From IMG/VR virus record IMGVR_UViG_3300036770_007495, positions 62,001 to 126,000 of that record: 64,000 nt of DNA. The stretch is one strand, 5' to 3'. Positions 9,669 through 64,000 of the stretch are shown one piece after another (position 1 is the stretch's first letter; each line of letters opens with the position of its first letter). The notes below the pieces were generated by a model, which was given only the letters and a program-made list of their open reading frames with translations, was not told the origin of the DNA and made no database searches. The translations under genes were made by a program, and so were the position numbers.

Positions 9669-9679
9669 TAAATATACAG

Positions 9680-10063
9680 ATGAACTTTACTGCACTGTAT
9701 GAGCAAAAAATGTACGCTTTGATTTTTGAAAAAAACTATGGAACAATTCCTAATCCTCCAATTGATGTAGTACTCTCAAAAAGGGCAACAAAAGATCTAA
9801 AAAAAGATCCTATGCTTCGTGCCAATTTCATTAAACGAATGAAGAATTGGGAAAATTTACGCCGTGATCGTGTGTGGGAAAAATTAGCTGCATCATCACG
9901 TTTAAATGACAAATTCAACTTGCCCAGAAACATTACAGCTGTTGCTTTGGATTTGGGTGGAGCACATTGGTATAGAGCCATTGGATACATTGATGACAAC
10001 AATGTGTATCAGATTTTCTCCATCATGACGCACGAAGCATTCAATAAAATAGCTGTATCATGA
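9680..10063 (+). CDS. HigB/RelE-like toxin-fold protein
   Basis: C-terminus LDLGGAHWYRAI...IFSIMTHEAFNK resembles HigB pattern IGG.KYRLI...IGTH.EYDK. Confidence 0.55.
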   Translation: MNFTALYEQKMYALIFEKNYGTIPNPPIDVVLSKRATKDLKKDPMLRANFIKRMKNWENLRRDRVWEKLAASSRLNDKFNLPRNITAVALDLGGAHWYRAIGYIDDNNVYQIFSIMTHEAFNKIAVS

Positions 10064-10100
10064 TTTTTTTACAGCATTATGTTATCCGAGAAAATAAATA

Positions 10101-10436
10101 ATGCCAATGAACGACCACAAGAATTTAATCACTGAATTTCTTAGCGGAGGATGGATCATTTTGATCATTGGAGCATCTGGAATGGGTGCAAGAATTCTGT
10201 GCAGTGGTGTTCGTCATTCTGCATTAGAGATCGTTAAAAAAATAATTGCAGCAGCTCTTTGCTCTGGCATTGCTTGGTATGTGTTGGAGCAGACTGATTT
10301 AGCAAGTCTCACCAAAGCAATTGTTTACGGTGTAGTTGGTGTTGTAAGCCCTGAACTCATCAATGGTCTCATCAAGATTGGTGCAAAATTTGCCAAGAAC
10401 CCAACCAAATTCTTCGACGACAACAAGAGCAATTGA
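10101..10436 (+). CDS. holin-like membrane protein
   Basis: 111 aa, three hydrophobic segments, charged C-tail. Confidence 0.55.
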   Translation: MPMNDHKNLITEFLSGGWIILIIGASGMGARILCSGVRHSALEIVKKIIAAALCSGIAWYVLEQTDLASLTKAIVYGVVGVVSPELINGLIKIGAKFAKNPTKFFDDNKSN

Positions 10437-10464
10437 AATTTCATGATTTGCATTAAATAAATGC

Positions 10465-11721
10465 ATGAATCGTAGAGAATTTCTTCGAGTTGGTGCTGCA
10501 GCAGGCATTTCTTTGCCAACAATGTTGCGCAGTCAAGATGCTACCAAAGTCAAAGCAGCATCAGTAATCCAAATCTTCTTGCCTGGTGGCATTGCACATC
10601 AGGATGCATGGGATTACAAACCATATGGATCACCAGAGTATCGTGGTCCATTTGCAGGCATCAAGACCAAAATTGATGGAGTTCACTTTGGTGCATTGTT
10701 GCAAAACACTGCTAAAATCAGCGACAACTTGACTGTGATTCGTTCCATGACACATGGTGAAGCAGCCCACGAACGAGGTGTGCACAACATGTTGACTGGC
10801 TACAGACCTTCACCTGCTTTGACATATCCATCATTTGGAACGGTCATCAATCACGAGTTGGGCGGCAGAAACAACTTGCCTGCATATGTGCTTGTGCCAA
10901 ATCAATTTGCTCCTGAGAATGGCACGGGATATCTATCAACACGTTACGGACCATTTGCAGTGGGGGCAAACCCAGAAGATCCTTCATTCTCCGTAAAGGA
11001 TCTCAAGTCACCTGCAGGAGTAACAGATCAGGCATTTGAACGTCGCAGAGCTCTTCTTGGTGTTGTTGATGACCATTTCAAAACCAGAGAATCACATGTG
11101 GATGCAGTCAAAGCCATGGATTCATTTTATAATGATGCATACAGCATGGTATCATCAACCCAAGCACGAGAAGCATTTGAATTGAGCAAAGAAACTGATG
11201 CAATGCGTGATGCATATGGCAGAAATGCTGCAGGCCAGCGCATGTTGCTGGCTCGCCGATTGGTAGAAGCAGGTGTTCGCATGGTCACTGTCACATATGG
11301 CAGCTGGGATCATCACAGCAATCTCAAAGGTGCGTTTGAGAGCAACATGATGAACTTTGATAAAGCATATGCCATGCTCATTACTGACTTGAAGCAAAGA
11401 GGCTTACTTGATTCTACACTGGTGATGATTACATCAGAATTTGGTCGCACACCAAAGATTAATGGAACCAATGGCCGCGATCACTGGCCTCGTGTGTTTT
11501 CCACTGTGCTTGCTGGGGGTGGAACCAAGGCTGGTTTTGCATATGGAACCAGCGATGCACTTGCTGCGGAACCGGAAACAGATCCTGTTTCGCCTGGTCA
11601 ATTGGCTGCAACCATGTACCATCTCATGGGCATTGATCCAAGAAAGAAGCTCATGACTCCTGATTTAAGACCAGTTGAAATTGTGTATGAAGAAGATCCT
11701 ATTGAAAAGATCTTGGCTTAA
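10465..11721 (+). CDS. DUF1501 protein with Tat signal
   Basis: NRREFL; IFLPGG..HQD.WD.KP; WDHH; SEFGRTPKIN..GRDHWP. Confidence 0.9.
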   Translation: MNRREFLRVGAAAGISLPTMLRSQDATKVKAASVIQIFLPGGIAHQDAWDYKPYGSPEYRGPFAGIKTKIDGVHFGALLQNTAKISDNLTVIRSMTHGEAAHERGVHNMLTGYRPSPALTYPSFGTVINHELGGRNNLPAYVLVPNQFAPENGTGYLSTRYGPFAVGANPEDPSFSVKDLKSPAGVTDQAFERRRALLGVVDDHFKTRESHVDAVKAMDSFYNDAYSMVSSTQAREAFELSKETDAMRDAYGRNAAGQRMLLARRLVEAGVRMVTVTYGSWDHHSNLKGAFESNMMNFDKAYAMLITDLKQRGLLDSTLVMITSEFGRTPKINGTNGRDHWPRVFSTVLAGGGTKAGFAYGTSDALAAEPETDPVSPGQLAATMYHLMGIDPRKKLMTPDLRPVEIVYEEDPIEKILA

Positions 11722-12044
11722 ACACCCTGGTTGGAGTAAGAGAAGAACTGCGATCTAAAAGAAAGCAAACCAGCACCTGCTGTAGTTTTTGCACTAACCT
11801 GAGAGCTGTTTGTTAATCCGCGAAATGTAAACTCTTCATTTGCAGACAACAAGAATGCATTGGTTGTATCAAAATTGTTCTGATCAAAAATGAGTACACC
11901 TTGACCTGTTGTGTTTTTAACAACGACTTCTGAACATACTTGAAATGGCAACTGCTTGAGATTGGTATCGAGAGCAACATTGAATGATTTGCATACATTC
12001 AGGTTGTAGTATGTTACTCCATTGTTTGTTGTGGGTGCTGGCAT
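11718..12044 (-). CDS. small beta-rich late protein
   Basis: TAAATA 5 nt upstream; 108-aa ORF. Confidence 0.65.
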   Translation of the reverse strand: MPAPTTNNGVTYYNLNVCKSFNVALDTNLKQLPFQVCSEVVVKNTTGQGVLIFDQNNFDTTNAFLLSANEEFTFRGLTNSSQVSAKTTAGAGLLSFRSQFFSYSNQGV

Positions 12045-12072
12045 AAGGTTATTTAGTCTGCTAAATACAATT

Positions 12073-12840
12073 ATGAGCTTTACCAGTCTATTTAATGATC
12101 TTCTTTTGGAAAAGAAAGTACTTACAAGAACAGAAATTCAGCAAGATCTGGAAAAGTTCATGGATCATCTCAAAACAAAAAACAATGTTTTGTTTGTAAC
12201 CACCAGCAACAGATGGGCTGGATCAGAGCAAAAAGCTAAATCTACACAATTGGCTTATCACATCAAAGATTCATTAACTGAATGCAACGTCAAAGTCATT
12301 GAAGCAGATAAACTCAACATCAGATGCTGCACAGGCAATGTGAGTTTGGCATCTGGCAACATTTGTGGTGCAAAAGATGCTTTGCTCAAAAGTTCATCAA
12401 AAAATCCAACCGGTCAAATCAGATGCTGGGAAGCCAAACACAGAGATGATGAGTTGTATAAAATTGCAAATGAAGTGTTCAAAGCTGATGCAGTTGTATT
12501 CTTTACAAGTGTAAGGTGGGGCCAAACCAACTCCATCTATCAAAAAGTGATTGAACGACTAACCTGGATAGAAAACAGATGGTCCTGTTTGGGTGAAAGC
12601 AATTTGCTTGAAAACAAAGAAGCAGGCATCATTGTCATTGGACAAAATTGGAAAGACAAGCAAGTTATGCAAACTCAGCGCAGTGTTTTTGAGATGTTTG
12701 GATTCAAATCACCTGCAAATCTCTCCATGTATTGGCAGTTTACTGATGATGCAATGGATGAATCCAAGCAGTCATACAAGGCAGCAGTTTCTCAGTTCCA
12801 AGATGACTTTGATTTAAGACTCCGCAAAAAGACTAAATAA
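12073..12840 (+). CDS. flavodoxin-like / NADPH-dependent FMN reductase family
   Basis: TSNR, C..C cluster, ADAVVFFTSVRWG, IERL. Confidence 0.7.
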   Translation: MSFTSLFNDLLLEKKVLTRTEIQQDLEKFMDHLKTKNNVLFVTTSNRWAGSEQKAKSTQLAYHIKDSLTECNVKVIEADKLNIRCCTGNVSLASGNICGAKDALLKSSSKNPTGQIRCWEAKHRDDELYKIANEVFKADAVVFFTSVRWGQTNSIYQKVIERLTWIENRWSCLGESNLLENKEAGIIVIGQNWKDKQVMQTQRSVFEMFGFKSPANLSMYWQFTDDAMDESKQSYKAAVSQFQDDFDLRLRKKTK

Positions 12841-12845
12841 ATTTT

Positions 12846-14633
12846 ATGAAAAAGCTAATTGTCCTATTTTTGAGCATTTGCACCTTAACTTTTGGTGCAA
12901 CATTAGAACAGCTTAACAACTACAGCGGCTGGATTGACTCAGTTTTAGAAAAGCAATACACTGCTGCCAAGGTAACGCCACTCAAGCGCATTGATGAAGA
13001 TACATTTGTGCGCAGAGCATATCTCACCATCATTGGCAGAAATCCAACATACGAAGAATATCAGATGTATGCCAAAGCAACTGATGCCAACAAGCGCCAA
13101 GGTTTGATTCAATTTTTAATGAATCATCCTGGACACGTTTCACACATGTTTAACTTTTGGGCTGAGTCTTTGAGACTAAGAGACAGATTATCCAACATCA
13201 ATAATTTTTCTGGTGGTCCATACATTGATTACATCAAAGACTCCATTGCTGCAAACAAACCATATACAAAGTTTGTTTCAGATTTGTTGACTGCATCAGG
13301 TTCATATTACGACAATCCTGCTACAGGCTATTTCTATCGCGATTTGGGAATGCCTTTGGACAACCTCATTGCAACTGGCAAAGTTTTCATGGGCACTGAC
13401 ATTGGATGTGCACAATGCCATGATGATCCATTCCAAGATTTCACTCAAATGCAGTTTTATAAAATGGCTGCTATGTTTAATCAAGTAGAGCTCAGGGGCC
13501 GCGGCAAAGATAAAGATCCAGCCATTGCAGCTCGTCAAAAGGCTCTAAGAGAAGAAGTAGATGCCTTGATCAAAGCTGATCCAATGAAGAATCGTGGTCT
13601 CAACAATCAGATCAACAACTTTGTTGCAGCCATGAGAGCCAATCTTGAGGTAGAGGAGAAAAGAGAATTAAAATTGCCTCACGATTATAAGTATACAGAT
13701 GCAAAGCCACTTGATACAGTTGTACCTGCAGTATTGTCAGGCAAAACAGAAATCAAGAACAAAGCTGATATGAGACAGGATGTTGTTGCATGGTTGGTGA
13801 GCCCACAGCATCCAACATTCACAAAGAACATTGTCAATAGATACTGGAAATGGGTGTTTGGTAGATACATCATTGATGACTATGACAATATTCATGATGA
13901 TGAAAAGCTCAATGGTGAGCTCATGAATGCACTTGCTAAAATCATGGTGCAGGTAAATTATGATAGCAAGCAGTTCATGTATGTGTTATTCAATACCAAG
14001 CTCTTTCAAAGAGAATTGTATGATGGAGCATACTCTAATACAGAAAGATTCATCTTCATTGGGCCTGTCAAGCAGCGTCTAACAGCCGAACAAATGTGGG
14101 ATTCAGTTGTATCCATTGCCATTGATCGCCCAGATACATTCAAGCTCAGCTTTCAAGATGAGTATGTCAAGGTGATGAGATACACCATTGAAGATCTTAC
14201 CATTGACAAACTCAAAGAAAAACAAGAAATGTATCAGAAGATTATGCGCTCCAAATACGATGCTGCTCCCAAGTATCGCAATTATCCACTTGCAAGAGCA
14301 TCTGAAGTGAATGACAACAGCCCTGTTAACACAATTCTTGAGCAGCTTGGCAGAGGCGACCGTGAGCTCATTGATACATCATCACGTGAAGGTTCTGTAA
14401 CACAAGTAATTTCATTCATGAATGGACAACTTGCTGAAGTTGCAGTAAACAAAGATACCAGCCTTGCAAAAGCCATTGCTGGCAAGTCTCCAACTGAGAC
14501 CATTGAAATTATTTTCAAGTCTGTTTTATCCAGAAAACCCACAATTGATGAGAGAAGCAAGTTCACTGGAGTGCAGGATGATGACATCATCTGGGCACTA
14601 GTCAATAGTTCTGAGTTCAAATTTAATAAATAA
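12846..14633 (+). CDS. DUF1549/DUF1553 protein with signal peptide and CxxCH
   Basis: D.TFVRRAYL.IIGR.PT; FMG..IGCAQCHD.PF; NIVNRYW; RLTAEQMWDS; WALVNSSEF. Confidence 0.9.
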   Translation: MKKLIVLFLSICTLTFGATLEQLNNYSGWIDSVLEKQYTAAKVTPLKRIDEDTFVRRAYLTIIGRNPTYEEYQMYAKATDANKRQGLIQFLMNHPGHVSHMFNFWAESLRLRDRLSNINNFSGGPYIDYIKDSIAANKPYTKFVSDLLTASGSYYDNPATGYFYRDLGMPLDNLIATGKVFMGTDIGCAQCHDDPFQDFTQMQFYKMAAMFNQVELRGRGKDKDPAIAARQKALREEVDALIKADPMKNRGLNNQINNFVAAMRANLEVEEKRELKLPHDYKYTDAKPLDTVVPAVLSGKTEIKNKADMRQDVVAWLVSPQHPTFTKNIVNRYWKWVFGRYIIDDYDNIHDDEKLNGELMNALAKIMVQVNYDSKQFMYVLFNTKLFQRELYDGAYSNTERFIFIGPVKQRLTAEQMWDSVVSIAIDRPDTFKLSFQDEYVKVMRYTIEDLTIDKLKEKQEMYQKIMRSKYDAAPKYRNYPLARASEVNDNSPVNTILEQLGRGDRELIDTSSREGSVTQVISFMNGQLAEVAVNKDTSLAKAIAGKSPTETIEIIFKSVLSRKPTIDERSKFTGVQDDDIIWALVNSSEFKFNK

Positions 14634-14637
14634 CAAC

Positions 14638-15873
14638 ATGAATACACTAACAAGACGCAACTTTGTGCTTAACCTTGCATCAGCAGGTTTAGGTGTAACC
14701 GTTCTTCCACACATTGTAGCTGCTCCAGCCAGCAAGAAAGCAGAACACATCATCTACCTCTTTATGAATGGAGGCATGAGCCATTTGGATACATTTGATC
14801 CTAAAATGGATGCTGAAGTCAAAGGTGAATTCAAATCCATCACCACAAATGCTGATTTTCAGATCTCTGAACATTTGCCTTTGATGGCCAAGCATGGTGA
14901 TAAGATGGCAGTTGTTCGTTCCATGATGGTAACAACTGGCGATCATGCTGGTGCACAATACTTGCAAAGAACATCATTCAAGAAGATTGGCACAGTTGTT
15001 CACCCCAACATGGGAGCATGGATGTGTCATTATACTGAAGATGGGAAGCCAAAAGTCATTCCACAAAACGTTTTGATTGGTGGTGGAGCTGATCACCCCG
15101 GTTCAGGGTGGATGCCTAAGAAGTATTCTCCTATTCCAGTTGCAGATCCTATGAGAGGTCTTGATAATACTAAGCTTAAGAATGCAGCAGAGTTTGCAAA
15201 GAGAGTACAAATCCTGGAAAAACTTGAAAAAGATGCAAACAAAATCATCAACCCAGCTCAAAAGTCATATGCTGAATTTTATGACCAAACAATTCGTCTT
15301 CTCAACTCAAATGAGCTTGATGTCTTTGATCTTTCCAAGGTGGATCAAGCAACAAGAGACAAATATGGCAACAATCGTTTTGGTCAAGGTGTTTGCTTGG
15401 CAAAACGCTTGATTGAAAAGGGTAATTGCAAGTTTATTGAAGTATCTGATGGTGGTTGGGATACACACGTTAATAACTTTGAATCTCTTGAGACAAAGCT
15501 CAAGGTGCTTGACCAAGCAGTTGATGCTCTTTTGCAAGACCTCAAATCATCTGGTCTTCTTGAGAAAACACTTGTTGTAATTGCAACAGACTTTGGTAGA
15601 ACACCAAACATCAACATCAACAATGGTAGAGATCATCACCCAGGTGCATTCTGCGGTGTTCTCATGGGTGCAGGCATCAAAGGCGGTCAAGCATATGGCA
15701 AGTCTGATGACAAGGGTATGAAAGCAATTGAAAACGTGGTTAGCCCAGCTGATTTCAATGCTACCATTGCTGCTGCTGCAGGATTGCCAATTGAAGATAT
15801 TGTAGTCTCACCTGATGGTAGACCATTCAAAATTGCTGATAAAGGAAAGCCTGTTACTGCTCTGCTTGCGTGA
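14638..15873 (+). CDS. DUF1501 protein with Tat signal (paralog 2)
   Basis: TRRNFV; GGMSHLDTFDPK; GWDTH; FGRTP..N..GRDHHP. Confidence 0.9.
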   Translation: MNTLTRRNFVLNLASAGLGVTVLPHIVAAPASKKAEHIIYLFMNGGMSHLDTFDPKMDAEVKGEFKSITTNADFQISEHLPLMAKHGDKMAVVRSMMVTTGDHAGAQYLQRTSFKKIGTVVHPNMGAWMCHYTEDGKPKVIPQNVLIGGGADHPGSGWMPKKYSPIPVADPMRGLDNTKLKNAAEFAKRVQILEKLEKDANKIINPAQKSYAEFYDQTIRLLNSNELDVFDLSKVDQATRDKYGNNRFGQGVCLAKRLIEKGNCKFIEVSDGGWDTHVNNFESLETKLKVLDQAVDALLQDLKSSGLLEKTLVVIATDFGRTPNININNGRDHHPGAFCGVLMGAGIKGGQAYGKSDDKGMKAIENVVSPADFNATIAAAAGLPIEDIVVSPDGRPFKIADKGKPVTALLA

Positions 15874-15891
15874 TCACGCATAAATAAGTTC

Positions 15892-17043
15892 ATGCAGAAC
15901 CAGGCTTTTCACTTTGAGATTGAAGATCTCATTACGCAATTCATTGCGGCATTTGATGATTGCGTAATCAAGAGGTTCACTGGTTCTCGTGAACAAAAAG
16001 ACCAAATCAGTGTGCGTTATGTTTATGCACCCAAGCAGCGTGTAATTTATGATATCATTAACAAAGGCAAGAATATAACATTGCCGGTTGTGAGCATCAG
16101 CATTTCGCAAATTGCAAGAGATTCATCCAGAGTGTTCAACAAGCTTGATGGATTTTATTATCCTGCTGCTAACACCGACAATGAATATGCTGCTTTTTCT
16201 AATCAGGTTTATTCACCGGTTCCTGTCAACATAACTGTCAACATGAGCATCATTGGCAAGTATCAGACAGACATTGAACAAATCTTATCCAATTTTGCCG
16301 CATATACAAATCCATATTTGGTCATAAGCTGGAAAATTCCTGCGGCTTATAATCTCACAAAGACATATGAGATTAGAACTGAAGTCGATTGGAGCGGATC
16401 CATTGCACTCAATTATCCTGGTGATCAGACACCAGCAGATTCTTACAGAGTAACTGCTGATACAAGCTTTACAATCAAAGGGTGGCTGTTTCCACAAGCA
16501 CCATCAAGTTCTGTTAAAAACATCTTTTTCATTGATGCTAATTTTTATGCAACAAATCAGTTGTCAGGCAATCCCTACAAGATGCTTTATTCCACTCTGG
16601 AAGACTATGCAACACTGAGTGCATCCAATTTGGCAGGCTTTACCGAGACCATTAACATATCTGCAGCACCAGCAATTACTAACATTTATTATGCAACCAA
16701 TGTTGGCATTGGTGAGCAAGTGTTCTCCAGTCTCACCATCAATGCATTCAATTCTGGTGGAACCATAACATTGTTTGGTAAAAGATTTCAATACACTACA
16801 GCAGTTGCACTTTGCAGCAACAATGCAACTCTTTACAAAGGTCTCACATCATTTGCATTTGCGTATTATCCAACTATTTCATGCATACCCATTGAAACAT
16901 ACAATGTTTTGAATGAAAACACAATGACCATCACATTGCCTGCTTTGACTGCATCAGGCAACTTTAACATTGTAGTACTCAATGAGGCAGGCTATGACAC
17001 AACATACAGCGCTAATCAAGGTGTTTTTACCAATGTGGTGTAG
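15892..17043 (+). CDS. gp15: tail sheath stabiliser/terminator with C-terminal extension
   Basis: FIAAFDD..IKR, V.Y.YAPKQ, LP..S, PVPVNI, QIL, FTIKGWLF. Confidence 0.75.
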   Translation: MQNQAFHFEIEDLITQFIAAFDDCVIKRFTGSREQKDQISVRYVYAPKQRVIYDIINKGKNITLPVVSISISQIARDSSRVFNKLDGFYYPAANTDNEYAAFSNQVYSPVPVNITVNMSIIGKYQTDIEQILSNFAAYTNPYLVISWKIPAAYNLTKTYEIRTEVDWSGSIALNYPGDQTPADSYRVTADTSFTIKGWLFPQAPSSSVKNIFFIDANFYATNQLSGNPYKMLYSTLEDYATLSASNLAGFTETINISAAPAITNIYYATNVGIGEQVFSSLTINAFNSGGTITLFGKRFQYTTAVALCSNNATLYKGLTSFAFAYYPTISCIPIETYNVLNENTMTITLPALTASGNFNIVVLNEAGYDTTYSANQGVFTNVV

Positions 17044-17074
17044 CTGTTTAAGCAATGACAACTAAATAACTAGA

Positions 17075-18874
17075 ATGGACTCTTCTTATAGCAATCAGGC
17101 AAATGTGCAGCAAACTTTTGGTAGGCAGTTGATGACCTACATTTCTTCCAAGCTGCCATACTCTGGATTCAACATTTTGGATTTCACAGAAAGAGAAAAT
17201 CCAAAATTCAAGACATTTGAGGAGACAGGCATCCGCAGAAATGAAGCACTAGCAAGAAACTCCATTTCACAATCCAACCTTTTCTCTACAGGGTATGGTG
17301 AGTTTCGTGACATTGGATTTGGTGATCTCATGTATGCAAACATGCAGAACGACAAAGGTGCACGTTTGCAGGATTACAGAGTCATGGCTGCTTTTGCAGA
17401 AGTATCCAATGCTCTTGATGAAATTTGTGATGAGATGATCAACAGAGATGCACAGAATCATGTTGTGAATGTGAAGCTCAAAAACTTTACAATGGATGCT
17501 GTGGATCTAGAACAGCTGCAGCTTGAGTTTCAGAAGTACGTTGAGTTCTTTGATTTGGAAAACAAAGGCTGGACATATTTTAGAGATTTGTTGGTTGAAG
17601 GTGAGTTGTATTTTGAACACATCATTCACAAAAAGTATTCTGATCAAGGCGTTTTGGGTGTAATTAGAATGCCTACTGAACTTGTTGATCCTGTTTACAA
17701 CAACATTCAAAACATGATTGTCAAAGGTTATCTTTACAGAAAGCCTGTTTTTGATGCTGTCAATCCCAAAAAGAAAATTGAAGAGAAGATGATTCCAATG
17801 CAAGAGAATCAGGTTGTTTACATCAACAGCGGTATTTGGAATCAAAACAAAACAGTGCGCCTGCCTTTCATTGAAAATGCTCGTCGTGCTTATCGTCAAT
17901 TGTCACTCATTGAAGATGCCATTGTCATTTACCGATTGGTGCGTGCACCAGAGCGTCTCATCTTCAACGTTGATGTTGGCAACATGGCACCACCCAAAGC
18001 AGAAGCATTTTTGCGCAAGCTCATGAATCAATACTGGAGCAGCAAAACATTTGATGTAGATCAGAATGATGTTGTTCGCAAGTTTAATCCTCAAAGCATG
18101 CTAGACAGCTTTTGGTTTGCCAAGCGTCAAGGTTCAGAAGGCACAAGCGTACAACAGCTGCCAGGTGGCCAAAATCTTGGTGAGTTGACAGACTTGATGT
18201 ACTTTGTCAAGAAATTGTATGAGGCACTCAAAGTGCCTGTCAACCGTTTGGATCCCCAATCACAGATTTCAGATGGCAGCACAGTATTGCGTGAAGAATT
18301 AAAGTTTGCTCGCTTCATCATCAGAATGCAACAGATGTTTGCATCTGGCATCAAAAAGGGCTTCATTACACATTTGCACCTCAAAGGACTTTGGGACAAA
18401 TGGAAGCTCAAAGATTATTACCTTGATGTAGAATTCAACCCACCGACCAACTATTATGAATTGCGCCAGAGTCAGCGATTGGAAGCCAAGGTGGGCAACT
18501 TCAACAATCTTGCATCCAATCCAACCATTTCTCAAACTTACTTGCAGCGTAAAATTCTTGGCTGGAGTGACATTGATGTCAAGGCTAATAGAGAGTACTT
18601 GCGTGCTGACAAGGAGCTTGAATGGGAGCTCAATCAAATCACCAACTCAGGCCCATATTGGAAGCTCATGATGGGTGGTGCGGTAGGTGGTGCAGAAGCT
18701 GGCGGCGCACCTCCAGGAGGAGGCGGCGGTGGTGGAGCTGGTCCAGGTGGAATGCCACCAGCATTTGCAGGAGGCCCTGCAGCACTTGAGACACCACCAG
18801 AAGCAGAAGCTCCACCTGAAGCTGGTGCACCAGAAGCTGCACAAGCTGCCCCTGCACCTGAAGCAGGCGCATAA
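17075..18874 (+). CDS. gp20: portal protein
   Basis: QLSLIEDAIVIYRLVRAPERLIFNVDVGNM..KAE; LPGGQNLGE; REELKF. Confidence 0.95.
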   Translation: MDSSYSNQANVQQTFGRQLMTYISSKLPYSGFNILDFTERENPKFKTFEETGIRRNEALARNSISQSNLFSTGYGEFRDIGFGDLMYANMQNDKGARLQDYRVMAAFAEVSNALDEICDEMINRDAQNHVVNVKLKNFTMDAVDLEQLQLEFQKYVEFFDLENKGWTYFRDLLVEGELYFEHIIHKKYSDQGVLGVIRMPTELVDPVYNNIQNMIVKGYLYRKPVFDAVNPKKKIEEKMIPMQENQVVYINSGIWNQNKTVRLPFIENARRAYRQLSLIEDAIVIYRLVRAPERLIFNVDVGNMAPPKAEAFLRKLMNQYWSSKTFDVDQNDVVRKFNPQSMLDSFWFAKRQGSEGTSVQQLPGGQNLGELTDLMYFVKKLYEALKVPVNRLDPQSQISDGSTVLREELKFARFIIRMQQMFASGIKKGFITHLHLKGLWDKWKLKDYYLDVEFNPPTNYYELRQSQRLEAKVGNFNNLASNPTISQTYLQRKILGWSDIDVKANREYLRADKELEWELNQITNSGPYWKLMMGGAVGGAEAGGAPPGGGGGGGAGPGGMPPAFAGGPAALETPPEAEAPPEAGAPEAAQAAPAPEAGA

Positions 18875-20060: not shown

Positions 20061-20133
20061 TAAAAATGTACAAAAATATGTGTATTGCTGCACATAAAAC
20101 ATAGATTTTAATCAAGCTTACATAAATACGAAT

Positions 20134-21841: not shown

Positions 21842-21911
21842 ATAGTACAACTGGAATCATAAAATGAGGTATAAAAATACCTGAGATCGAGATTAAGAAA
21901 AAGGAAAATCT

Positions 21912-23387: not shown

Positions 23388-23412
23388 TAACGGAAGAAAA
23401 AAGGTCAACTTG

Positions 23413-23446
23413 GCGCTGGAGGATTGCTACTCCAGCGCTTTTTTTT
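23413..23446 (+). terminator. intrinsic terminator after gp23
   Basis: gcgctgga/tccagcgc + T8. Confidence 0.85.
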
Positions 23447-23460
23447 GTATAAATAACATC

Positions 23461-24366: not shown

Positions 24367-24403
24367 GCTAATATTTATTCATAGCATGCTTTATTTTAGC
24401 ATA

Positions 24404-26440: not shown

Positions 26441-26475
26441 GTTGTACAATACAATGAAAATGCAGGACAATCAAC

Positions 26476-29364: not shown

Positions 29365-29413
29365 TGCCAACAATATACATGGTGTTCTCAAATTTTCAAC
29401 TTAAATATCTAAT

Positions 29414-42590: not shown

Positions 42591-42599
42591 ATGCTGTAT

Positions 42600-45963: not shown

Positions 45964-45979
45964 ACGGCTATTTAAAAGG

Positions 45980-55504: not shown

Positions 55505-55533
55505 TCCCTGTAATATAGCATAAATACATGTAA

Positions 55534-58662: not shown

Positions 58663-58709
58663 AAGTAAAGGTAACTGATAGAAACAAGAATTCAACATAA
58701 ATAATACAT

Positions 58710-59465
58710 ATGAGCAAAAAAACTCGCTTGCGCAAAGCGCTGGCAGACCTCGAATTCGGTGATGGTGACATTGAAGTTCATACCACAAGATCATCTTCAA
58801 ATCTCGGAATCAGAAACAAGTATCAGCTCAATGATGTACATAAATCCTTCTTGGATACTTGTTTATATGAAAAAACCAAAATGGTGCTTGTTGATGGACC
58901 AGCTGGTACGGCAAAAACCTTTTTAGCAGTGTATGCTGGCTTGTTGCTGCTGCAAGAGAAAAAAATTAAAAATATCATTTACATTCGCAGCATTGTAGAA
59001 TCAGCAACCAAAAGCATTGGTGCATTGCCAGGTGAATTGGATGAAAAATTCAAGCCTTGGAGCTTGCCTTTGCTGGATAAACTCAATGAATTGCTGCCGC
59101 CAACTTCCATTGATGATCTCATGGAAAGTGGCACCATCAAGTGCATTCCTGTGAACTTTGTTCGTGGTCTCACCTTTCATGATTCCATGGTTATCATTGA
59201 CGAATTCCAGAATCTTACACATGAAGAAGGTGTTACAATCCTGACTCGCTTTGGTCACAACAGCAAGTACATTGCCATTGGCGATGCTCGTCAGGCAGAC
59301 ATTGGCTCAAAGTCCGGGTTCAAGGATTTGTTCAACGCTTTTGATGATGAAGAAAGCGCAGAACATGGCATTCATACTTTTAGGTTCGGCGAGAACGAAA
59401 TTGTACGAAGCAAAATTCTGCGCTTTATCGTGAGCAAAATTGCTAAGGTAAAGAAGTCGGGTTAA
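58710..59465 (+). CDS. phoH: PhoH-like ATPase
   Basis: GPAGTAKT; G.LPG..EK; RG.TF; IIDEFQN; GD..Q.D; IVRS. Confidence 0.92.
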   Translation: MSKKTRLRKALADLEFGDGDIEVHTTRSSSNLGIRNKYQLNDVHKSFLDTCLYEKTKMVLVDGPAGTAKTFLAVYAGLLLLQEKKIKNIIYIRSIVESATKSIGALPGELDEKFKPWSLPLLDKLNELLPPTSIDDLMESGTIKCIPVNFVRGLTFHDSMVIIDEFQNLTHEEGVTILTRFGHNSKYIAIGDARQADIGSKSGFKDLFNAFDDEESAEHGIHTFRFGENEIVRSKILRFIVSKIAKVKKSG

Positions 59466-60088
59466 TTGCCCCAACTTGTACCTTTGAACCAATCTCCCTT
59501 GCCAGATGACACATTGGGTCCAACACTTGCTGGACGACCGCCATTGCGTGTAACTTCTGGTGCAACAAGCGGAGTAACTTCTACTGGTTCAGGTGCAGGC
59601 TGTTCACCACCCAATCCATCTTCAGGAATTTCACGATCTTGCTCTACATCACAGTCACAGAAGAGAGCAGAGTTGTCTTCATGCTCAAACACTTCTACTT
59701 GCTTCACCCAGCAGCGATCACCATACTTGGCTTTGAGAAATTCTGATGCCATTTCAAAGCATTTTTCAGCAGCTCGCTCAATGCCAACACCCTTGTCAAA
59801 AATGCGCAGTTGAATGATGCCAGATGCATCCAATGCTTTGAGCTGCTCAAGAGCGGGATCATCAGCAGCTGCACAATACGTATGATCAAACACATGCTGC
59901 AGTTGCTGCTTCAGCTCTTTAAGACCACCAAAATCAACAGCCCAATTCTTTTCATCAAGCTCTTTGCAACCAAACCAAAACTTTGCTTTGAGTTGGTAAC
60001 CGTGAATGTATTGACAGTGAGAATGCGTTGCTCTCCATTGACGAAATGCGCAGGAGCCTAATTCAATGACTTTGGTACTTGTAAACAT
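59462..60088 (-). CDS. queD: 6-carboxytetrahydropterin synthase
   Basis: HC..IHGY; VDFG.LK; FDH; V.E. Confidence 0.85.
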   Translation of the reverse strand: MFTSTKVIELGSCAFRQWRATHSHCQYIHGYQLKAKFWFGCKELDEKNWAVDFGGLKELKQQLQHVFDHTYCAAADDPALEQLKALDASGIIQLRIFDKGVGIERAAEKCFEMASEFLKAKYGDRCWVKQVEVFEHEDNSALFCDCDVEQDREIPEDGLGGEQPAPEPVEVTPLVAPEVTRNGGRPASVGPNVSSGKGDWFKGTSWGN

Positions 60089-60118
60089 ATGTACAAGTTA
60101 ATGTCTAAAAATTAGAAA

Positions 60119-61129
60119 TCAAGGCTGCTGAGATGCAAAAGCAATGGCAAAGTCATTTGTATTTGGAATACGCATCAAGCTTCCATAACCTTGATATGCT
60201 GTATTTGTTGATTTTTCAACAATTGTTACGAGCGCTCCTTCATTAACAAATTCTGGCTTGCTTGTAATATCAACAAAGCGAACACCTGCTTTTTGTGGTG
60301 CTGGTGGTTTATTAGCTGGCGGTTTATTAGCTGGTTGTGTATTAGGAGTATTAGCTGGTTGTGTATTAGGAGTATTAGCTGGTTGTGTATTAGGAGGCGG
60401 CACCGGTGGCACCACTGGTGGTGCTGGTGGTTGTGGTGCTTCTAATAACATCATTTGGTTTGCAAATAAATCACCAAAGCTTCTGTGCTCAAGCAGTCTT
60501 CCAGAACCGTTGGTAAGTTTAATTTGTGAAACATAATATGTTTTGCCGCGAGCTACAATGTATGCTGCACCTTTTCTATCTCCTTTGATGTTGAAGGATT
60601 TGCCTGCCATTTCTGTAGGAATTTTTGTTAATCCAACCTGCTTACCAAGTGCAATGTTTTGTTGAGCAGCTGCTGCAGCTGCTGTTGCGTCTGCAGCAGC
60701 ACCAGGCTGTGGGTTAGATGGTCTGCCTGTTACTGTGTTCCACACACCACCTACCACTTGTCTGCCAAGTGATCCAACGGATCGTGATATTGGCGTACCC
60801 TGCGGGGTGCCTGCTGCACCTGCTGCAAGATTTGTTGCTGCACTACCAATTCCTGATGCAACTCTGCCTGCAGCTTTAAATGGTGCTGCCGCAACTTTGC
60901 CAATGCCAGATAAAATGCCCTCAACAACCACAGCTTTCTTTGGAATTAGTACAATCTCATTGTTGCTAAAAAATTTGATAGCATCTTCTGTTTCTGCAAG
61001 GATATATCCTTCATAACCATTGTACTGCGCAAAATCTTCTGCATATTTGTTGAGAGGATCAACCTTGAGACGCACTCTCTGCAGATTCTTTTCAAGAATG
61101 GATGAATACTGATCAAAAAACTTGGACAT
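60119..61129 (-). CDS. late protein with low-complexity Ala/Gly/Pro linkers
   Basis: TAAATA 5 nt upstream; 336-aa ORF. Confidence 0.7.
   Translation of the reverse strand: MSKFFDQYSSILEKNLQRVRLKVDPLNKYAEDFAQYNGYEGYILAETEDAIKFFSNNEIVLIPKKAVVVEGILSGIGKVAAAPFKAAGRVASGIGSAATNLAAGAAGTPQGTPISRSVGSLGRQVVGGVWNTVTGRPSNPQPGAAADATAAAAAAQQNIALGKQVGLTKIPTEMAGKSFNIKGDRKGAAYIVARGKTYYVSQIKLTNGSGRLLEHRSFGDLFANQMMLLEAPQPPAPPVVPPVPPPNTQPANTPNTQPANTPNTQPANKPPANKPPAPQKAGVRFVDITSKPEFVNEGALVTIVEKSTNTAYQGYGSLMRIPNTNDFAIAFASQQP
60325..60396. repeat. 24-bp tandem repeat x3 (in frame, PNTQPANT)
   Basis: tattagctggttgtgtattaggag repeated three times. Confidence 0.9.
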
Positions 61130-61174
61130 GCAAGTATTTAGTAGATTTCTCTATTTTTTACGTTACATTATAGA

Positions 61175-61822: not shown

Positions 61823-62216
61823 GTGAGGGATCGACTACGCTGTTCATTTGAGCAATGAAGTCTTTGCTCAACAGCACTGGTTCGCTCATACCAGAGCGAT
61901 CAGAAATAGTAAAAGGCTGACCTTTGTAAGTCTTACCGTTAACCGTCACGTCGAGTCGAATCACGTGACGGTTTTCTTGTAATTGAGGTCCTTTGTTGAT
62001 CATCATTGTGCCTTGAGAATGAGCACGATGTTGTTTGCCATTGCATACAAATGTTACAATGGCACCATCATCTTTGATGTCTGTTGCATGCAACACATTG
62101 TGTCCATCATTGCCTGTATCAGCTTTGGCATCAAAAGCGCCAATGTTGTGAACTTCAATGCGCACTGTTGGTGGTATTGCGTGTTTTTCAAAAAAGAACT
62201 GCTTGAATGTTTGCAC
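61815..62216 (-). CDS. retropepsin-like (RimK-associated) aspartic protease
   Basis: AKADTG; E.R.VI; DRS.M..PVL. Confidence 0.75.
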
Positions 62217-62224
62217 GCAGTTAT

Positions 62225-63271
62225 TTATTTTGCAAATTTGATTTTGTATCCACTAGAATCGTAGCATGCAGAGAAAGTTACATCACATGCTCGCAACTCT
62301 TTGAACAATCTGATGCAGCTCCATGCATCATACTCTATGCATGCATTGTTGATGATGAATGCTGTACCAAATGGTGCTGTCTTTTTGCCTGGATGCTTAA
62401 ACAATACAAACCAGTCATCTTTTTTGCTGCAAATGTATTCAAGAAGTTGAGCTGCTCCTAAAAAATGCATTGCATCTTCTTTGCATTTGATCAAATTCTC
62501 GCAGCAAGCAGCACGAGCCATGCAACCAATGCTGTAAGGCAGCATTGAAAAATCATATGGCACTTCATAAATCTTTGATATTTCAGCAAACTGAAATTCA
62601 AACTGCATGGCACTAACTACAGGGCGATCTTTTGCAAACTGATTGATGAATTTTTCAATGTTTGCACGATTGCCAATCCATTTGCTTGATTCTCCAATGC
62701 GACCGCCATCGCCTTTCAACTCAATGAGGTTGTTGTTGATCATGATGTCGCCTTTGTCAGCTTTGTATCCACCAGCAAGCAACAACAAAGGCAACTCTGC
62801 AGGACCAGAATAGCCACGAGTCTTGCCTTCATCAGAAATGGGACGCATTTTTGTCCACACTTCAGCAGTCAATGCACTTGCTTTAAAATCTGCTTTGTAA
62901 TATTCACCCAAGAAATCAACAATGTTGGTTCTTTTGAATGCATTTTCTTGCAGATGCTTCAAGAATAATGGAGCAATTGCATCAGTTGATATCGTTTCCA
63001 ACATCTGCAACACACATTCATTGGATACATCACACAAGTAACCAAACAATTTGTTGAGTTCAGTCAATCTATCAATGACTCTGTTGGCAGCAATGAGCTT
63101 GTTGCTTCTTTTGATTAGATTGTCATTGATAACTTTGAAGCATTTGCCAATTTGTGCATGCTGCTTTTGCAGATCAATGTAATGAACAATTATTTCATCC
63201 CACAAACACCCATCAATAACGTATTCCTTTGCATCATCTGTTGCATCATTTGTTGCTACAACGTTGATCAT
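62225..63271 (-). CDS. hypothetical with PD-(D/E)XK-like motif
   Basis: GPAE...KGDI.....IELK. Confidence 0.5.
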   Translation of the reverse strand: MINVVATNDATDDAKEYVIDGCLWDEIIVHYIDLQKQHAQIGKCFKVINDNLIKRSNKLIAANRVIDRLTELNKLFGYLCDVSNECVLQMLETISTDAIAPLFLKHLQENAFKRTNIVDFLGEYYKADFKASALTAEVWTKMRPISDEGKTRGYSGPAELPLLLLAGGYKADKGDIMINNNLIELKGDGGRIGESSKWIGNRANIEKFINQFAKDRPVVSAMQFEFQFAEISKIYEVPYDFSMLPYSIGCMARAACCENLIKCKEDAMHFLGAAQLLEYICSKKDDWFVLFKHPGKKTAPFGTAFIINNACIEYDAWSCIRLFKELRACDVTFSACYDSSGYKIKFAK

Positions 63272-63276
63272 GCAAA

Positions 63277-63687
63277 TCAAGGTGCAGTTGACAAATCCTT
63301 GAGTACCGCACTTACTATCTGCTCAACTTGTGCAGGATCTGAGGTGGACAACTGAGAAATTGCAATGTTGATTTGTTTCTCAACATCAGCTGGAATGCTT
63401 GACCTTACTGCTTGAAGTCTGTCACTATCATTGCCTTCAATTGCACCTGCTGTTTGAGCAACAAGTCTAAGCAATTGAATAATGATGGTTCTGAATGTAT
63501 CATAACCGCTCTGAATTTGCTCAGTTGTTTTGTCTGGCTGTTGTGCCATTGCTGCATCAGGTTGAGCAGGAGCTGCTTGTTGATCTTGTGCTGGCGCTTG
63601 CTGCATAGCTACATCAGCAGCTTCATCTTGCTCCATCAAGTAAGTTGCACGAGCTTCTCTAATTACACTGTCAAATATACTTTGCAT
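63277..63687 (-). CDS. Gln/Ala-rich late protein
   Basis: TAAATA 6 nt upstream. Confidence 0.65.
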   Translation of the reverse strand: MQSIFDSVIREARATYLMEQDEAADVAMQQAPAQDQQAAPAQPDAAMAQQPDKTTEQIQSGYDTFRTIIIQLLRLVAQTAGAIEGNDSDRLQAVRSSIPADVEKQINIAISQLSTSDPAQVEQIVSAVLKDLSTAP

Positions 63688-63688
63688 T

Positions 63689-64000
63689 TCAGGTATTTAG
63701 GAGCATGCATTTGGTTTTCAAACAGTTGAAGTAGTTGTTGTTGAGAAAAACCAACTTGTATTTGTCAATGAATCTTGTAGCCTTGTCATAGCTATATTTT
63801 ATCTTGTCACCATTGCTGATTTGCATCAAAAATGATGTGCCTTGATTGTTGCTTATGAGTTTGTTGTAATATTCAATAGGTTTGCTGCTGCAATACCATG
63901 TCAAAGGAAGTTTTTTGGTTGCTTCCATGATGAGTTTGTGAATAAACTCCTTGATTTTACCATTTTCATCATCTGGCACCTGGATGCACTCAGAGCTGTA
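63689..64000 (-). CDS. partial hypothetical protein (start probably outside window)
   Basis: open frame runs to window edge. Confidence 0.5.
   Translation of the reverse strand, partial: YSSECIQVPDDENGKIKEFIHKLIMEATKKLPLTWYCSSKPIEYYNKLISNNQGTSFLMQISNGDKIKYSYDKATRFIDKYKLVFLNNNYFNCLKTKCMLLNT

What the first reader, a model, noticed from the sequence alone, without database searches (positions are those of the whole stretch)
9669..63698. Late genes appear individually promoted and leaderless (TAAATA-N5/6-start)
Seen: TAAATA ends 5-6 nt before the start codon at 2889, 9680, 10465, 12044(-), 12073, 12846, 14638, 15892, 17075, 20134, 23461, 24366(-), 29414, 38522(-), 42590(-), 58710, 61129(-), 62216(-) and 63687(-), with no room for an SD. 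gp23 has a longer leader with AAGGA. Established: T4 late promoters are TATAAATA at about -13 to -6. Inference: +1 coincides with the start codon, i.e. a leaderless late programme, coherent with a phage fMet tRNA and anti-translation RNAs/proteins.
Basis: partly seen in the sequence, partly recalled or inferred. Interest (0 to 1): 0.7.

Follow-up and report, generated by a model that had tools for sequence, protein, structure and literature searches.

The report
Phage genes start at their promoters
In this uncultured 225-kb T4-like water phage, about a hundred genes (early as well as late) have their start codon 5-7 bases after a promoter box, so their mRNAs should begin at the AUG with no leader or ribosome-binding site; this layout is absent from T4 and only partial in one cultured relative.

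Summary
All 19 listed sites have TAAATA 5 or 6 nt before the start codon. Genome-wide, 39 of 132 TAAATA copies lie exactly 5 nt before an ATG that opens an ORF of at least 60 aa (0.67 expected), 16 lie at 6 nt and 7 at 7 nt. These genes are structural, and a gp55 late-sigma homologue lies just outside the window. Since the T4 late box spans -13 to -6, N5 puts +1 on the A of ATG.

The interpretation needs one correction: the layout is not late-specific. About 43 sigma70-type promoters (TTGA-N17-TAnnnT) sit 5-6 nt before the ATG of early or metabolic genes. The exact TATAAT box peaks at N6, which fits its -12 to -7 position. The genome has almost no Shine-Dalgarno sites, and downstream cistrons overlap their neighbours. 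gp23 is the exception, with a 62-nt leader carrying AAGGA.

A relative with 55% portal identity shows the same two peaks. T4 and cyanophage S-SM2 do not. Pelagibacter phage HTVC008M shows it for 11 genes.

Transcription start sites were not observed, because metatranscriptome contigs could not resolve 5' ends. The host is unknown. I rate this a new variant of a known kind; the precedent is Thermus phage phiYS40.

The parts
2878..2891 (+). Late box TAAATA, N5, ATG. Gene is an HNH homing endonuclease (294 aa). The box directly follows tRNA-Trp.
9669..9682 (+). Late box, N5, ATG (127 aa). The box starts right after the CCA end of tRNA-Leu.
10095..10109 (+). Late box, N6, ATG (109 aa).
10454..10467 (+). 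Late box, N5, ATG (418 aa).
12042..12055 (-). Late box, N5, ATG (108 aa). One half of a divergent pair that shares a 28-nt intergenic gap.
12062..12075 (+). Late box, N5, ATG (255 aa). The other half of the divergent pair.
12834..12848 (+). Late box, N6, ATG (595 aa).
14627..14640 (+). Late box, N5, ATG (411 aa).
15881..15894 (+). Late box, N5, ATG. Gene is a tail sheath stabiliser (383 aa).
17063..17077 (+). Late box, N6, ATG. Gene is the portal protein (599 aa). The box is kept in 40 related loci.
20123..20136 (+). Late box, N5, ATG. Gene is the prohead protease, gp21-like (221 aa).
21839..21914 (+). The exception. Late box at 21839-21844, predicted +1 near 21850. The 62-nt leader has a conserved GAGG...CCT hairpin and AAGGA 8 nt before the ATG of the major capsid gene.
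23412..23439 (+). The only strong intrinsic terminator on the + strand between 9 and 26 kb, just after gp23. It is the likely shared 3' end of the nested late transcripts.
23450..23463 (+). Full TATAAATA box, N5, ATG (93 aa), directly after the terminator.
24364..24377 (-). Late box, N5, ATG (190 aa).
29402..29416 (+). Late box, N6, ATG (188 aa). An overlapping baseplate-hub-like gene follows at 29977-32394.
33094..33108 (-). Late box, N6, ATG (55 aa).
34370..34385 (+). Late box, N7, ATG (278 aa).
38520..38533 (-). Late box, N5, ATG (83 aa).
42588..42602 (-). Late box, N6, ATG. Gene gives a weak Cpn10/gp31-like match (133 aa).
45961..45974 (-). Late box, N5, ATG (280 aa).
55521..55536 (+). Late box, N7, ATG (282 aa).
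58698..58712 (+). Late box, N6, ATG. Gene is PhoH-like (251 aa).
61127..61140 (-). Late box, N5, ATG (336 aa).
62214..62227 (-). Late box, N5, GTG (133 aa). The only non-ATG site in the list.
63685..63699 (-). Late box, N6, ATG (136 aa).
5247..5283 (+). Sigma70-type promoter TTGATA-N16-TATAAT, N6, ATG (62 aa).
26438..26474 (-). Sigma70-type promoter (TTGATT ... TATTGT), N5, ATG. Gene is UvdE endonuclease (305 aa).
29362..29399 (-). Sigma70-type promoter (TTGAAA ... TATTGT), N5, ATG (265 aa). Divergent from the late box at 29402.
37719..37755 (-). Sigma70-type promoter TTGATT-N16-TATATT, N6, ATG. Gene is ribonucleotide reductase large subunit (830 aa). The ATP-cone domain begins at residue 4.
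41451..41486 (-). Sigma70-type promoter (TTGCAA ... TACAAT), N5, ATG. Gene is a helicase (540 aa).
55502..55540 (-). Sigma70-type promoter (TTGCCA ... TATATT), N7, ATG. Gene is a glycosyltransferase and heads a roughly 13-kb run of overlapping minus-strand genes reaching down to about 42.6 kb.
60086..60122 (-). Sigma70-type promoter (TTGATT ... TAACTT), N6, ATG. Gene is a 6-pyruvoyl-tetrahydropterin synthase/QueD-like protein (208 aa).
5163..5236 (+). tRNA-Met (CAT) with three G:C pairs closing the anticodon stem and a probable 1:72 mismatch. Initiator-like but atypical.

Best explanation
The phage expresses first cistrons as leaderless mRNAs from two promoter classes.

1. Early and metabolic genes use host sigma70-type promoters (TTGA(C/T), about 17 bp, TAnnnT). 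The -10 hexamer ends 5-6 nt before the ATG.
2. Late structural genes use a T4-type late box ((A/C)TAAATA, no -35), presumably read by the phage gp55 homologue. The box ends 5 nt (less often 6-7) before the ATG.

Because the sigma70 -10 hexamer spans -12 to -7 and the gp55 box -13 to -6, both layouts put +1 on the A of the start codon. The 5'-terminal AUG would then be bound directly by ribosomes carrying initiator tRNA, without an SD.

Genes without their own promoter mostly overlap the upstream gene and are probably translated by coupling. An internal cistron without an SD is poorly initiated, which would explain why late genes each carry their own box. With one terminator after gp23, this gives a nested set of 3'-coterminal transcripts, each translated mainly from its 5' gene. 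Only the major capsid gene keeps a long structured leader with an SD-like AAGGA.

Shown: the motif geometry, its statistics, its conservation, the gene functions and the gp55 homologue. Inferred: that the boxes are active promoters, the exact +1, and the mode of ribosome binding.
For: Statistics and geometry
- All sites verified. N5 holds 39 against 0.67 expected, P = 8e-57.
- TAAATA at spacing 5 is the best of 4096 hexamers. The reversed-genome control is empty.
- Both TAAATA and TATAAT are depleted 2-3 fold genome-wide but enriched in intergenic DNA.
- The base at -1 is C or T in 90% of N5 sites, and A is at +1. In relative G001, -1 is T in 20 of 23 N5 sites.

Second promoter class
- TTGA-N18-20-TAnnnT sites: 18 at N5 and 19 at N6, against a background of 0-3.
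- The exact TATAAT box: 8 at N6 and 2 at N5 out of 94 copies. Seven of the 8 N6 sites carry TTGA 16-17 bp upstream.

Gene functions
- Sigma70-type class: RNA ligases, PRPP synthase, NAMPT, NrdA, a helicase, UvdE and QueD. Pfam domains begin at residues 1-9, so these starts are correct.
- Late class: portal, prohead protease, sheath, tape measure, tail fibre and sheath stabiliser.

Late sigma factor
- A gp55 homologue is present, in T4-like synteny.

Independent replicate
- G001 is 229,717 bp with 55% portal identity. TAAATA gives 13/23/15 at N4/5/6. TATAAT gives 23 at N6 against 1 at N5.
- Forty related loci show a clade-wide N5 peak.
- The -35/TATAAT/ATG pattern occurs 13, 2, 8 and 4 times in four relatives, against 0, 0, 0 and 1 for the reversed pattern.

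Negative controls
- T4: 0 of 18 TATAAATA boxes at N5-7. The mode is N26-28, with an SD.
- S-SM2: boxes lie 15-38 nt upstream of late genes.

Other
- Box position in T4 is -13 to -6 (PMC2988020).
- The genome lacks SD sites, and 72 of 154 same-strand promoterless genes overlap the upstream gene.
Against: - No transcription start site was observed.
- Metatranscriptome contigs do not resolve 5' ends. One low-depth 3.6-kb contig of a relative runs across the divergent pair at 12044/12073, and another crosses the box at 20123. This is compatible with read-through or DNA carry-over, but it is not the gap that strict leaderless units would predict.
- Spacing is not rigid. N6 and N7 sites lack the pyrimidine at -1, and distant relatives have N9-N15 before the portal gene. 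Some transcripts may therefore carry 1-10 nt leaders.
- gp33 was not convincingly found (E = 0.03) and gp45 was not found by profile.
- The gene set used for counts is a crude ORF-based call.
- The host, and hence its capacity for leaderless initiation, is unknown.
Confidence: 0.75

Rival explanations
1. Leaderless expression is a late-specific programme that lets the phage redirect translation late in infection. It would be helped by a phage initiator tRNA and by factors that block SD-led host translation.
For: - Late boxes are the most numerous class (62 sites).
- A tRNA-Met with an initiator-like anticodon stem is encoded.
- Precedent: phiYS40 middle and late mRNAs are leaderless, and infection shifts the IF2/IF3 balance (PMC3594737).
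Against: - About 43 sigma70-type promoters of early or metabolic genes have the same layout. The same is true in relatives.
- The whole genome lacks SD sites.
- No S21 or IF3 gene was found.
- The most abundant late protein, gp23, is the one gene that keeps a leader with an SD.
Confidence: 0.1
2. TAAATA-N5-AUG acts in the RNA, not the DNA. It would be either an SD-independent ribosome-loading or re-initiation signal on polycistronic mRNA, or the recognition site of an endoribonuclease that cuts just before the AUG.
For: - In 10 of 52 sites the TAA of the box is the stop codon of the upstream gene.
- RNA contigs run across some boxes.
- Internal genes must be initiated without an SD somehow.
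Against: - 36 of 52 boxes are fully intergenic, and 15 face a gene on the opposite strand. These include a divergent pair with only 28 nt between the two start codons.
- Boxes also directly follow tRNA genes.
- The motif equals the late promoter box of T4-like phages, where it lies 14-38 nt upstream, and a gp55 homologue is present.
- The parallel sigma70 class has a -35 element at about 17 bp, which has no meaning in RNA.
- The pyrimidine at -1 followed by A at +1 is a start-site signature.
Confidence: 0.08
3. The boxes are promoters, but most transcripts carry short leaders of 1-10 nt because the enzyme starts closer to the box than in T4, or the true start codons lie further downstream. In that case the mRNAs are 'short-leadered' rather than leaderless.
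For: - N6, N7 and N10 sites exist.
- Distant relatives have N9-N15 before the portal gene.
- G001 has 13 sites at N4.
Against: - Both genomes show a sharp mode at N5, and TATAAT shows one at N6.
- The first ATG of the ORF is the box-adjacent one in most cases.
- Pfam domain starts at residues 1-9 support the called starts in the sigma70 class.
Confidence: 0.07

Closest known systems
T4 late transcription (gp55 late sigma, gp33, gp45 clamp; TATAAATA box at -13 to -6)
   Same: - An A/T box of the same core sequence with no -35 element.
- It lies upstream of structural genes.
- A gp55 homologue is present in the same gene neighbourhood (uvsW-55-47-46).
- Many late genes carry their own box.
   Different: - In T4 the box lies 14-32 nt before the ATG, with an SD in the leader (0 of 18 boxes at N5-7). 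Here it lies 5-7 nt before.
- The consensus here is (A/C)TAAATA. The full TATAAATA occurs only 4 times.
- gp33 and gp45 were not identified by profile search.
Thermus phage phiYS40 middle/late leaderless transcripts (Sevostyanova et al. 2007, as cited in PMC3594737 and PMC12340547)
   Same: - A large myovirus in which most genes of a temporal class are transcribed from a -10-type element placed so that the mRNA starts at the start codon.
- Translation does not depend on an SD.
   Different: - phiYS40 is not T4-like and uses host sigma with -10-type promoters.
- Its host phylum (Deinococcus-Thermus) is itself rich in leaderless genes.
- Here two promoter classes are involved (host-type and gp55-type), early genes are included, and the host is unknown.
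- The original phiYS40 paper could not be read here.
'-10 region adjacent to ORF' genes of Deinococcus-Thermus and leaderless genes of mycobacteria (PMC12340547; PMC4633059)
   Same: The sigma70-class geometry is the same: a -10 hexamer a few nucleotides before the start codon, and no RBS.
   Different: Those are cellular genomes in which this is one mode among others. Here it is the dominant mode for the first cistrons of a phage, and it extends to a phage-specific sigma.
Pelagibacter phage HTVC008M (cultured T4-like pelagimyophage)
   Same: Eleven genes in 100 kb (gp3, head closure, gp48, a wedge protein and others) have TAAATA exactly 5 nt before the ATG.
   Different: - Its major structural genes (sheath, tube, portal, gp21, gp23) have leaders with GGAG or AAGGA.
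- It shows no TATAAT-N6 class.
- Its MCP is only about 30% identical to this phage's.
- Published work reports that late-promoter prediction failed in pelagimyophages (PMC7029224).
Cyanomyovirus S-SM2 (one of the nearest cultured capsid relatives, about 33% identity)
   Same: It has the same (A/C)TAAATA late box, a gp55 gene and the same gene order.
   Different: Its boxes lie 15-38 nt upstream of late genes, and only 1 of 41 is at N5.

Membership tests
T4-type (gp55-dependent) late promoters | TATAAATA-like box about one helical turn upstream of +1 | tested here: met
   The box is (A/C)TAAATA. It occurs 62 times at N5-7 from a start. The full TATAAATA octamer occurs only 4 times.
T4-type (gp55-dependent) late promoters | No conserved -35 element | tested here: met
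   In the position-specific composition of 31 N5 sites, no column upstream of the box exceeds about 48% for any base.
T4-type (gp55-dependent) late promoters | Phage encodes a gp55 late sigma | tested here: met
   PHROG 234 gives E = 1.5e-26 at G000 128824-129306 (2.8 kb beyond the window's end). The protein is 31-32% identical to the gp55 of T4, S-SM2 and HTVC008M, with conserved motifs, and lies in uvsW-55-47-46 synteny.
T4-type (gp55-dependent) late promoters | gp33 co-activator and gp45 sliding clamp present | tested here: inconclusive
   The gp33 profile gives only E = 0.03, inside a 342-aa frame. The gp45 profile gives no hit at E <= 1. A gp44 clamp-loader homologue is present (tblastn 8e-38). 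The C-terminus of the gp55 homologue ends in SDLQ, against SLDFLYEAND in T4.
T4-type (gp55-dependent) late promoters | Located before late (virion) genes | tested here: met
   Portal, prohead protease, sheath, tape measure, tail fibre and sheath stabiliser. A few non-structural genes also carry the box (HNH endonuclease, PhoH).
T4-type (gp55-dependent) late promoters | Transcription starts 6 nt after the box and depends on gp55 | not testable with these tools
   No raw-read RNA data were available. Contigs were inconclusive.
Leaderless mRNA genes | -10-type promoter element 5-7 nt upstream of the start codon | tested here: met
   62 late boxes and about 43 sigma70-type promoters. Replicated in G001.
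Leaderless mRNA genes | No SD between promoter and start codon | tested here: met
   None of the 52 box-adjacent gene calls has an SD-like 4-mer.
Leaderless mRNA genes | AUG as the start codon | tested here: met
   62 ATG against 3 GTG at box-adjacent starts. The search favoured ATG, so this is weak support.
Leaderless mRNA genes | Primary 5' end of the mRNA coincides with the first base of the start codon | tested here: inconclusive
   Only assembled metatranscriptome contigs could be laid on the window. Some end 14-20 nt inside genes and some cross boxes.
Bacteroidota-type expression (SD-free, TAnnTTTG promoters) | -7 motif TAnnTTTG with a -33 TTTG | tested here: not met
   TAnnTTTG occurs 215 times against 200 expected, with only 12 copies intergenic. 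The combined pattern occurs 11 times against 6.5 expected, with none intergenic.

The most novel reading that the evidence does not exclude
An abundant, uncultured clade of aquatic T4-like phages (thousands of capsid variants in metagenomes, with very high gp23 RNA in lake metatranscriptomes) has given up SD-led initiation almost completely. Every transcription unit, whether read by host sigma70 or by the phage late sigma, would begin at its own start codon. Late genes would be expressed as a nested set of 3'-coterminal leaderless mRNAs, one promoter per gene, so protein ratios would be set by promoter strength rather than by ribosome-binding sites. Only the capsid gene keeps a structured leader with an SD. 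A phage initiator-like tRNA may support this mode.
Probability: 0.5. Interest if true: 0.7.

Novelty: new variant of a known kind. Interest (0 to 1): 0.6.

Why it matters
- **Principle.** Leaderless mRNAs are usually seen as a minority or lineage-specific mode (Actinobacteria, Deinococcus-Thermus, archaea, a few phage genes). Here the best-understood phage transcription system, the T4 late system, appears to have been re-spaced so that promoter recognition alone also defines the translation start. The host-type early promoters are re-spaced in the same way.
- **Annotation.** Gene callers that rely on ribosome-binding sites will misplace starts in this large environmental clade. Earlier attempts to find late promoters in related pelagimyophages failed (PMC7029224). 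The TAAATA-N5-ATG and TATAAT-N6-ATG rules give both promoters and start codons directly.
- **A testable model.** One promoter per gene plus a shared terminator predicts nested transcripts, each translated mainly from its 5' cistron.
- **The host.** Its ribosomes must initiate well on 5'-AUG, which is a usable clue for host assignment.

Tried and rejected
1. **Direct 5'-end evidence.** gp23 is very highly represented. Contig ends do not map start sites, however, and some contigs cross boxes, so the result is inconclusive. No raw-read RNA runs were offered.
2. **Bacteroidota host or promoter type.** Rejected. TAnnTTTG is not enriched, while canonical TTGAC/TATAAT is.
3. **Cyanophage.** No psbA in this genome or in two relatives.
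4. **Actinophage marker and phage translation factors.** No WhiB, ribosomal protein S21 or IF3 gene.
5. **Host by binning.** Capsid relatives sit in MAGs labelled Bacteriovoracaceae, Terrimicrobiaceae, Polynucleobacter and others, which is inconsistent. The four of these MAGs that were searched show no promoter-abutting-ATG signal.
6. **Host from other look-ups.** The look-up of encoding contigs and the protein atlas returned only metagenomic or viral records.
7. **gp45 and gp33 profiles.** No hit or only a weak one.
8. **Stop-codon artefact.** The idea that TAAATA is only an upstream stop codon is rejected. It applies to 10 of 52 sites.
9. **Simple k-mer search for an early motif in intergenic DNA.** Uninformative. 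The sigma70 class emerged only from the spaced pattern.
10. **Literature.** No paper in the library describes leaderless late genes in T4-like phages. The phiYS40 primary paper is not held.

Full report
**Context.** The window is bases 62,001-126,000 of a single-contig, 224,703-bp virus record with direct terminal repeats, estimated complete, at 41% G+C. It is a metagenome-assembled T4-like phage.
- Near-identical DNA occurs in subsurface, soil, lake, lagoon and estuary metagenomes and in freshwater metatranscriptomes.
- Its major capsid protein is only about 33% identical to the best cultured relatives, which are cyanomyoviruses. Thousands of relatives at 73-97% identity exist in metagenomes, none of them named.
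- The window carries a tRNA array (23 genes by ARAGORN), then a structural module (portal, prohead protease, scaffold, gp23), then nucleotide-metabolism and other genes.

**Checking the observation.** All 19 sites read back as described. Thirteen are TAAATA-N5-start and six are N6. Eighteen use ATG and one uses GTG.

Genome-wide, TAAATA occurs 132 times on both strands, against about 300 expected from base composition.
- 39 copies end exactly 5 nt before an ATG opening an ORF of at least 60 aa. Another 15-16 end at 6 nt and 7 at 7 nt. Other spacings from 0 to 40 hold 0-4 each.
- About 0.67 is expected per spacing. P is 8e-57 for N5 and 1e-75 for N5-7.
- In a blind scan of all 4096 hexamers, TAAATA at spacing 5 gives the highest fixed-spacing peak. 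The runners-up are its own shifted sub-words.
- The reversed genome gives 0-1 per spacing.
- Of the 78 copies not wholly inside a coding region, 65 abut a start codon.
- The motif is not just a stop codon. In 10 of 52 sites its TAA is the upstream gene's stop. In 36 sites the box is fully intergenic, and in 15 the neighbour is on the other strand. The pair 12044(-)/12073(+) has start codons only 28 nt apart, and both boxes lie in that gap.

**What the box is.**
- The genes behind it are mostly virion genes: portal, prohead protease, sheath stabiliser, head-tail adaptor, tail sheath, tape measure and tail fibre.
- The consensus is (A/C)TAAATA with no conserved -35 region. This is the T4-family late box, which in T4 spans -13 to -6 (PMC2988020).
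- A gp55 late-sigma homologue lies 2.8 kb beyond the window's end, at G000 128824-129306. It matches PHROG 234 at E = 1.5e-26.
- It sits between a uvsW-like helicase and gp47/gp46 homologues, as in cyanophage S-SM2, and next to gp47/gp46 as in T4.
- It shares the conserved gp55 motifs at 31-32% identity.
- gp33 was not convincingly found and gp45 was not found by profile, although a gp44 clamp loader is present.

**Geometry.** If the last A of the box is at -6, the sixth base downstream is +1. TAAATA-N5-ATG therefore puts +1 on the A of ATG. In line with a start site, position -1 is C (58%) or T (32%) and never A at N5 sites. In relative G001 it is T in 20 of 23 sites.

**The twist: it is not late-specific.** Searching for canonical host promoters showed that TATAAT is also strongly depleted, with 94 copies against about 298 expected.
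- Eight of those 94 copies lie exactly 6 nt before a long-ORF ATG. Seven of the eight have TTGA (five of them TTGAC) 16-17 bp upstream.
- With the looser pattern TTGA-N18-20-TAnnnT, 18 sites lie at N5 and 19 at N6, against a background of 0-3. This gives about 43 genes (P = 1e-32).
- These genes are RNA ligases 1 and 2, PRPP synthase, NAMPT, HD and metallophosphoesterase proteins. In the window they are NrdA, a helicase, UvdE, a glycosyltransferase and QueD. All are early or metabolic functions.
- Pfam domains begin at residues 1-9 of these proteins, so the promoter-adjacent ATGs are the true starts.
- A sigma70 -10 hexamer spans -12 to -7, so N6 again puts +1 on the A of ATG. The one-base offset between the two classes (TATAAT at N6, TAAATA at N5) is what is expected if both are tuned to start at the AUG.
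- The Bacteroidota promoter TAnnTTTG is not enriched.

**The rest of the genome.** Only 23 of 327 crude gene calls have any SD-like 4-mer in the right place, which is about chance. Promoterless genes on the same strand as their neighbour have a median gap of 1 nt. Of 154 such genes, 72 overlap the upstream gene, 30 of them by ATGA, which suggests translational coupling.

gp23 is the clear exception. Its box is at 21839-21844, the predicted +1 is near 21850, and the 62-nt leader carries a hairpin and AAGGA 8 nt before the ATG. The hairpin is kept in all the relatives examined and the AAGGA in most.

Between 9 and 26 kb the + strand has one strong terminator, right after gp23. The late genes from 9680 to gp23, nearly all with their own box, would therefore give nested transcripts sharing a 3' end.

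**Replication and controls.**
- Forty IMG/VR loci with portals 43-98% identical keep the box before the portal gene. Close relatives have N6-N7 and the most distant have N9-N15. The clade as a whole shows the N5 peak.
- A complete relative, G001 (229,717 bp, 35% G+C, 55% portal identity), reproduces both peaks. TAAATA gives 13/23/15 at N4/5/6. TATAAT gives 23 at N6 against 1 at N5. These are among the three strongest hexamer-spacing combinations in that genome, the strongest being ATAATA at spacing 5, the shifted form of TATAAT at N6.
- Four relatives carry the -35/TATAAT/N5-7/ATG pattern 13, 2, 8 and 4 times, against 0, 0, 0 and 1 for the reversed pattern.
- In T4, none of 18 TATAAATA boxes in the late region is at N5-7. 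The mode is N26-28, with an SD.
- In S-SM2 the boxes lie 15-38 nt upstream.
- Pelagibacter phage HTVC008M is intermediate. Eleven genes have the box at exactly N5, while its major structural genes have leaders with an SD.

**Direct evidence.** Only assembled contigs of four freshwater metatranscriptomes could be laid on the window.
- They show very high gp23 representation (word depth in the thousands to tens of thousands, against 74 upstream).
- They cannot place 5' ends. One contig begins 14 nt inside the gp21 gene. Another crosses its box. A low-depth 3.6-kb contig of a relative crosses the divergent pair.
- I count this as inconclusive. It is the main gap in the argument.

**Mechanism proposed.** First cistrons are leaderless mRNAs made from two promoter classes, host sigma70 early and the gp55 homologue late. 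Ribosomes with initiator tRNA bind the 5'-AUG directly. Downstream cistrons are coupled.

The lack of SD sites explains why late genes are individually promoted. Protein ratios would then be set mainly at the level of transcription initiation.

The tRNA-Met at 5163-5236 has three G:C pairs closing the anticodon stem and a probable 1:72 mismatch. Both are initiator features, and extra initiator tRNA would favour this mode. The tRNA is atypical and untested, and Rfam did not report it at gathering score.

**Comparison and novelty.** The closest functional precedent is Thermus phage phiYS40, whose middle and late mRNAs are mostly leaderless (PMC3594737). The same geometry is common in Deinococcus-Thermus genomes (PMC12340547) and in mycobacteria (PMC4633059).

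I found no report of T4-family late promoters abutting start codons. A study of pelagimyophages states that late-promoter prediction failed (PMC7029224). I therefore rate this a new variant of a known kind: a known principle, applied genome-wide by a T4-like lineage through both host and phage sigma factors.

**Host.** Unknown. The phage has no psbA, WhiB or S21 gene. MAG bin labels are inconsistent, and the four MAGs searched lack the signal. The canonical TTGAC/TATAAT early promoters argue against Bacteroidota. The AAGGA in the gp23 leader suggests the host can still use an SD.

Noticed in passing
window 21845-21911 and the gp23 upstream regions of L003, L007, L009, L010, L015-L020, L025, L029, L042, L043: The capsid-gene leader carries a conserved hairpin (GAGG, variable loop, CCTGAG). 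An AAGGA follows about 6-12 nt before the ATG in most relatives. It is the only clearly SD-bearing, structured 5' UTR seen in this genome and may be a regulatory or stabilising element.
   Followed up: partly
window 5163-5236: tRNA-Met (CAT) has three consecutive G:C pairs next to the anticodon loop and a probable U-U mismatch at 1:72. These are initiator-like features. ARAGORN calls it, but Rfam does not at gathering score.
   Followed up: partly
window 309-9668: A large tRNA array. ARAGORN finds 23 genes. Rfam finds three more (4445-4515, 7733-7803, 7808-7879) and misses several of ARAGORN's. An HNH homing endonuclease gene (2889-3773) sits inside the array under a late box. Two late boxes begin immediately after the CCA end of a tRNA (2878, 9669).
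   Followed up: partly
L077/L078 (Pelagibacter phage HTVC008M, NC_020484, bases 1-100000): Eleven genes of this cultured phage (gp3, head closure, gp48, a wedge subunit and others) have TAAATA exactly 5 nt before the ATG. Sheath, tube, portal, gp21 and gp23 have leaders with an SD. This looks like an unreported late-promoter rule for pelagimyophages.
   Followed up: partly
G000 12,800-34,300, + strand (upstream of the window): Early promoters share an extended upstream motif, AAACAG-TTGAC(T), and often GGAA(A/C) in the spacer. This suggests a phage-specific early promoter family rather than generic host promoters.
   Followed up: no
window 42600-55504, minus strand: A roughly 13-kb run of about 15 overlapping genes (200-400 aa each, the first a family-2 glycosyltransferase). 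It has no internal boxes and is headed by a single sigma70-type promoter that abuts the first ATG. It may be a sugar or DNA-modification operon.
   Followed up: no
window 57790-62216: A QueD/PTPS-like gene (59465-60088) lies next to PhoH and several unannotated genes. This hints at a 7-deazaguanine (queuosine-type) base-modification pathway.
   Followed up: no
window 21800-23400 in runs X15-X18: The capsid gene of this phage lineage reaches word depths of thousands to tens of thousands in lake metatranscriptomes, 100-fold above neighbouring genes. The lineage is therefore actively infecting in those samples.
   Followed up: partly
window 18872-18890 and 20793-20811: Two late-region genes (18888, 390 aa; 20809, 48 aa) have the box at N10. 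This predicts 4-5 nt leaders and makes them natural test cases for how much leader the system tolerates.
   Followed up: no
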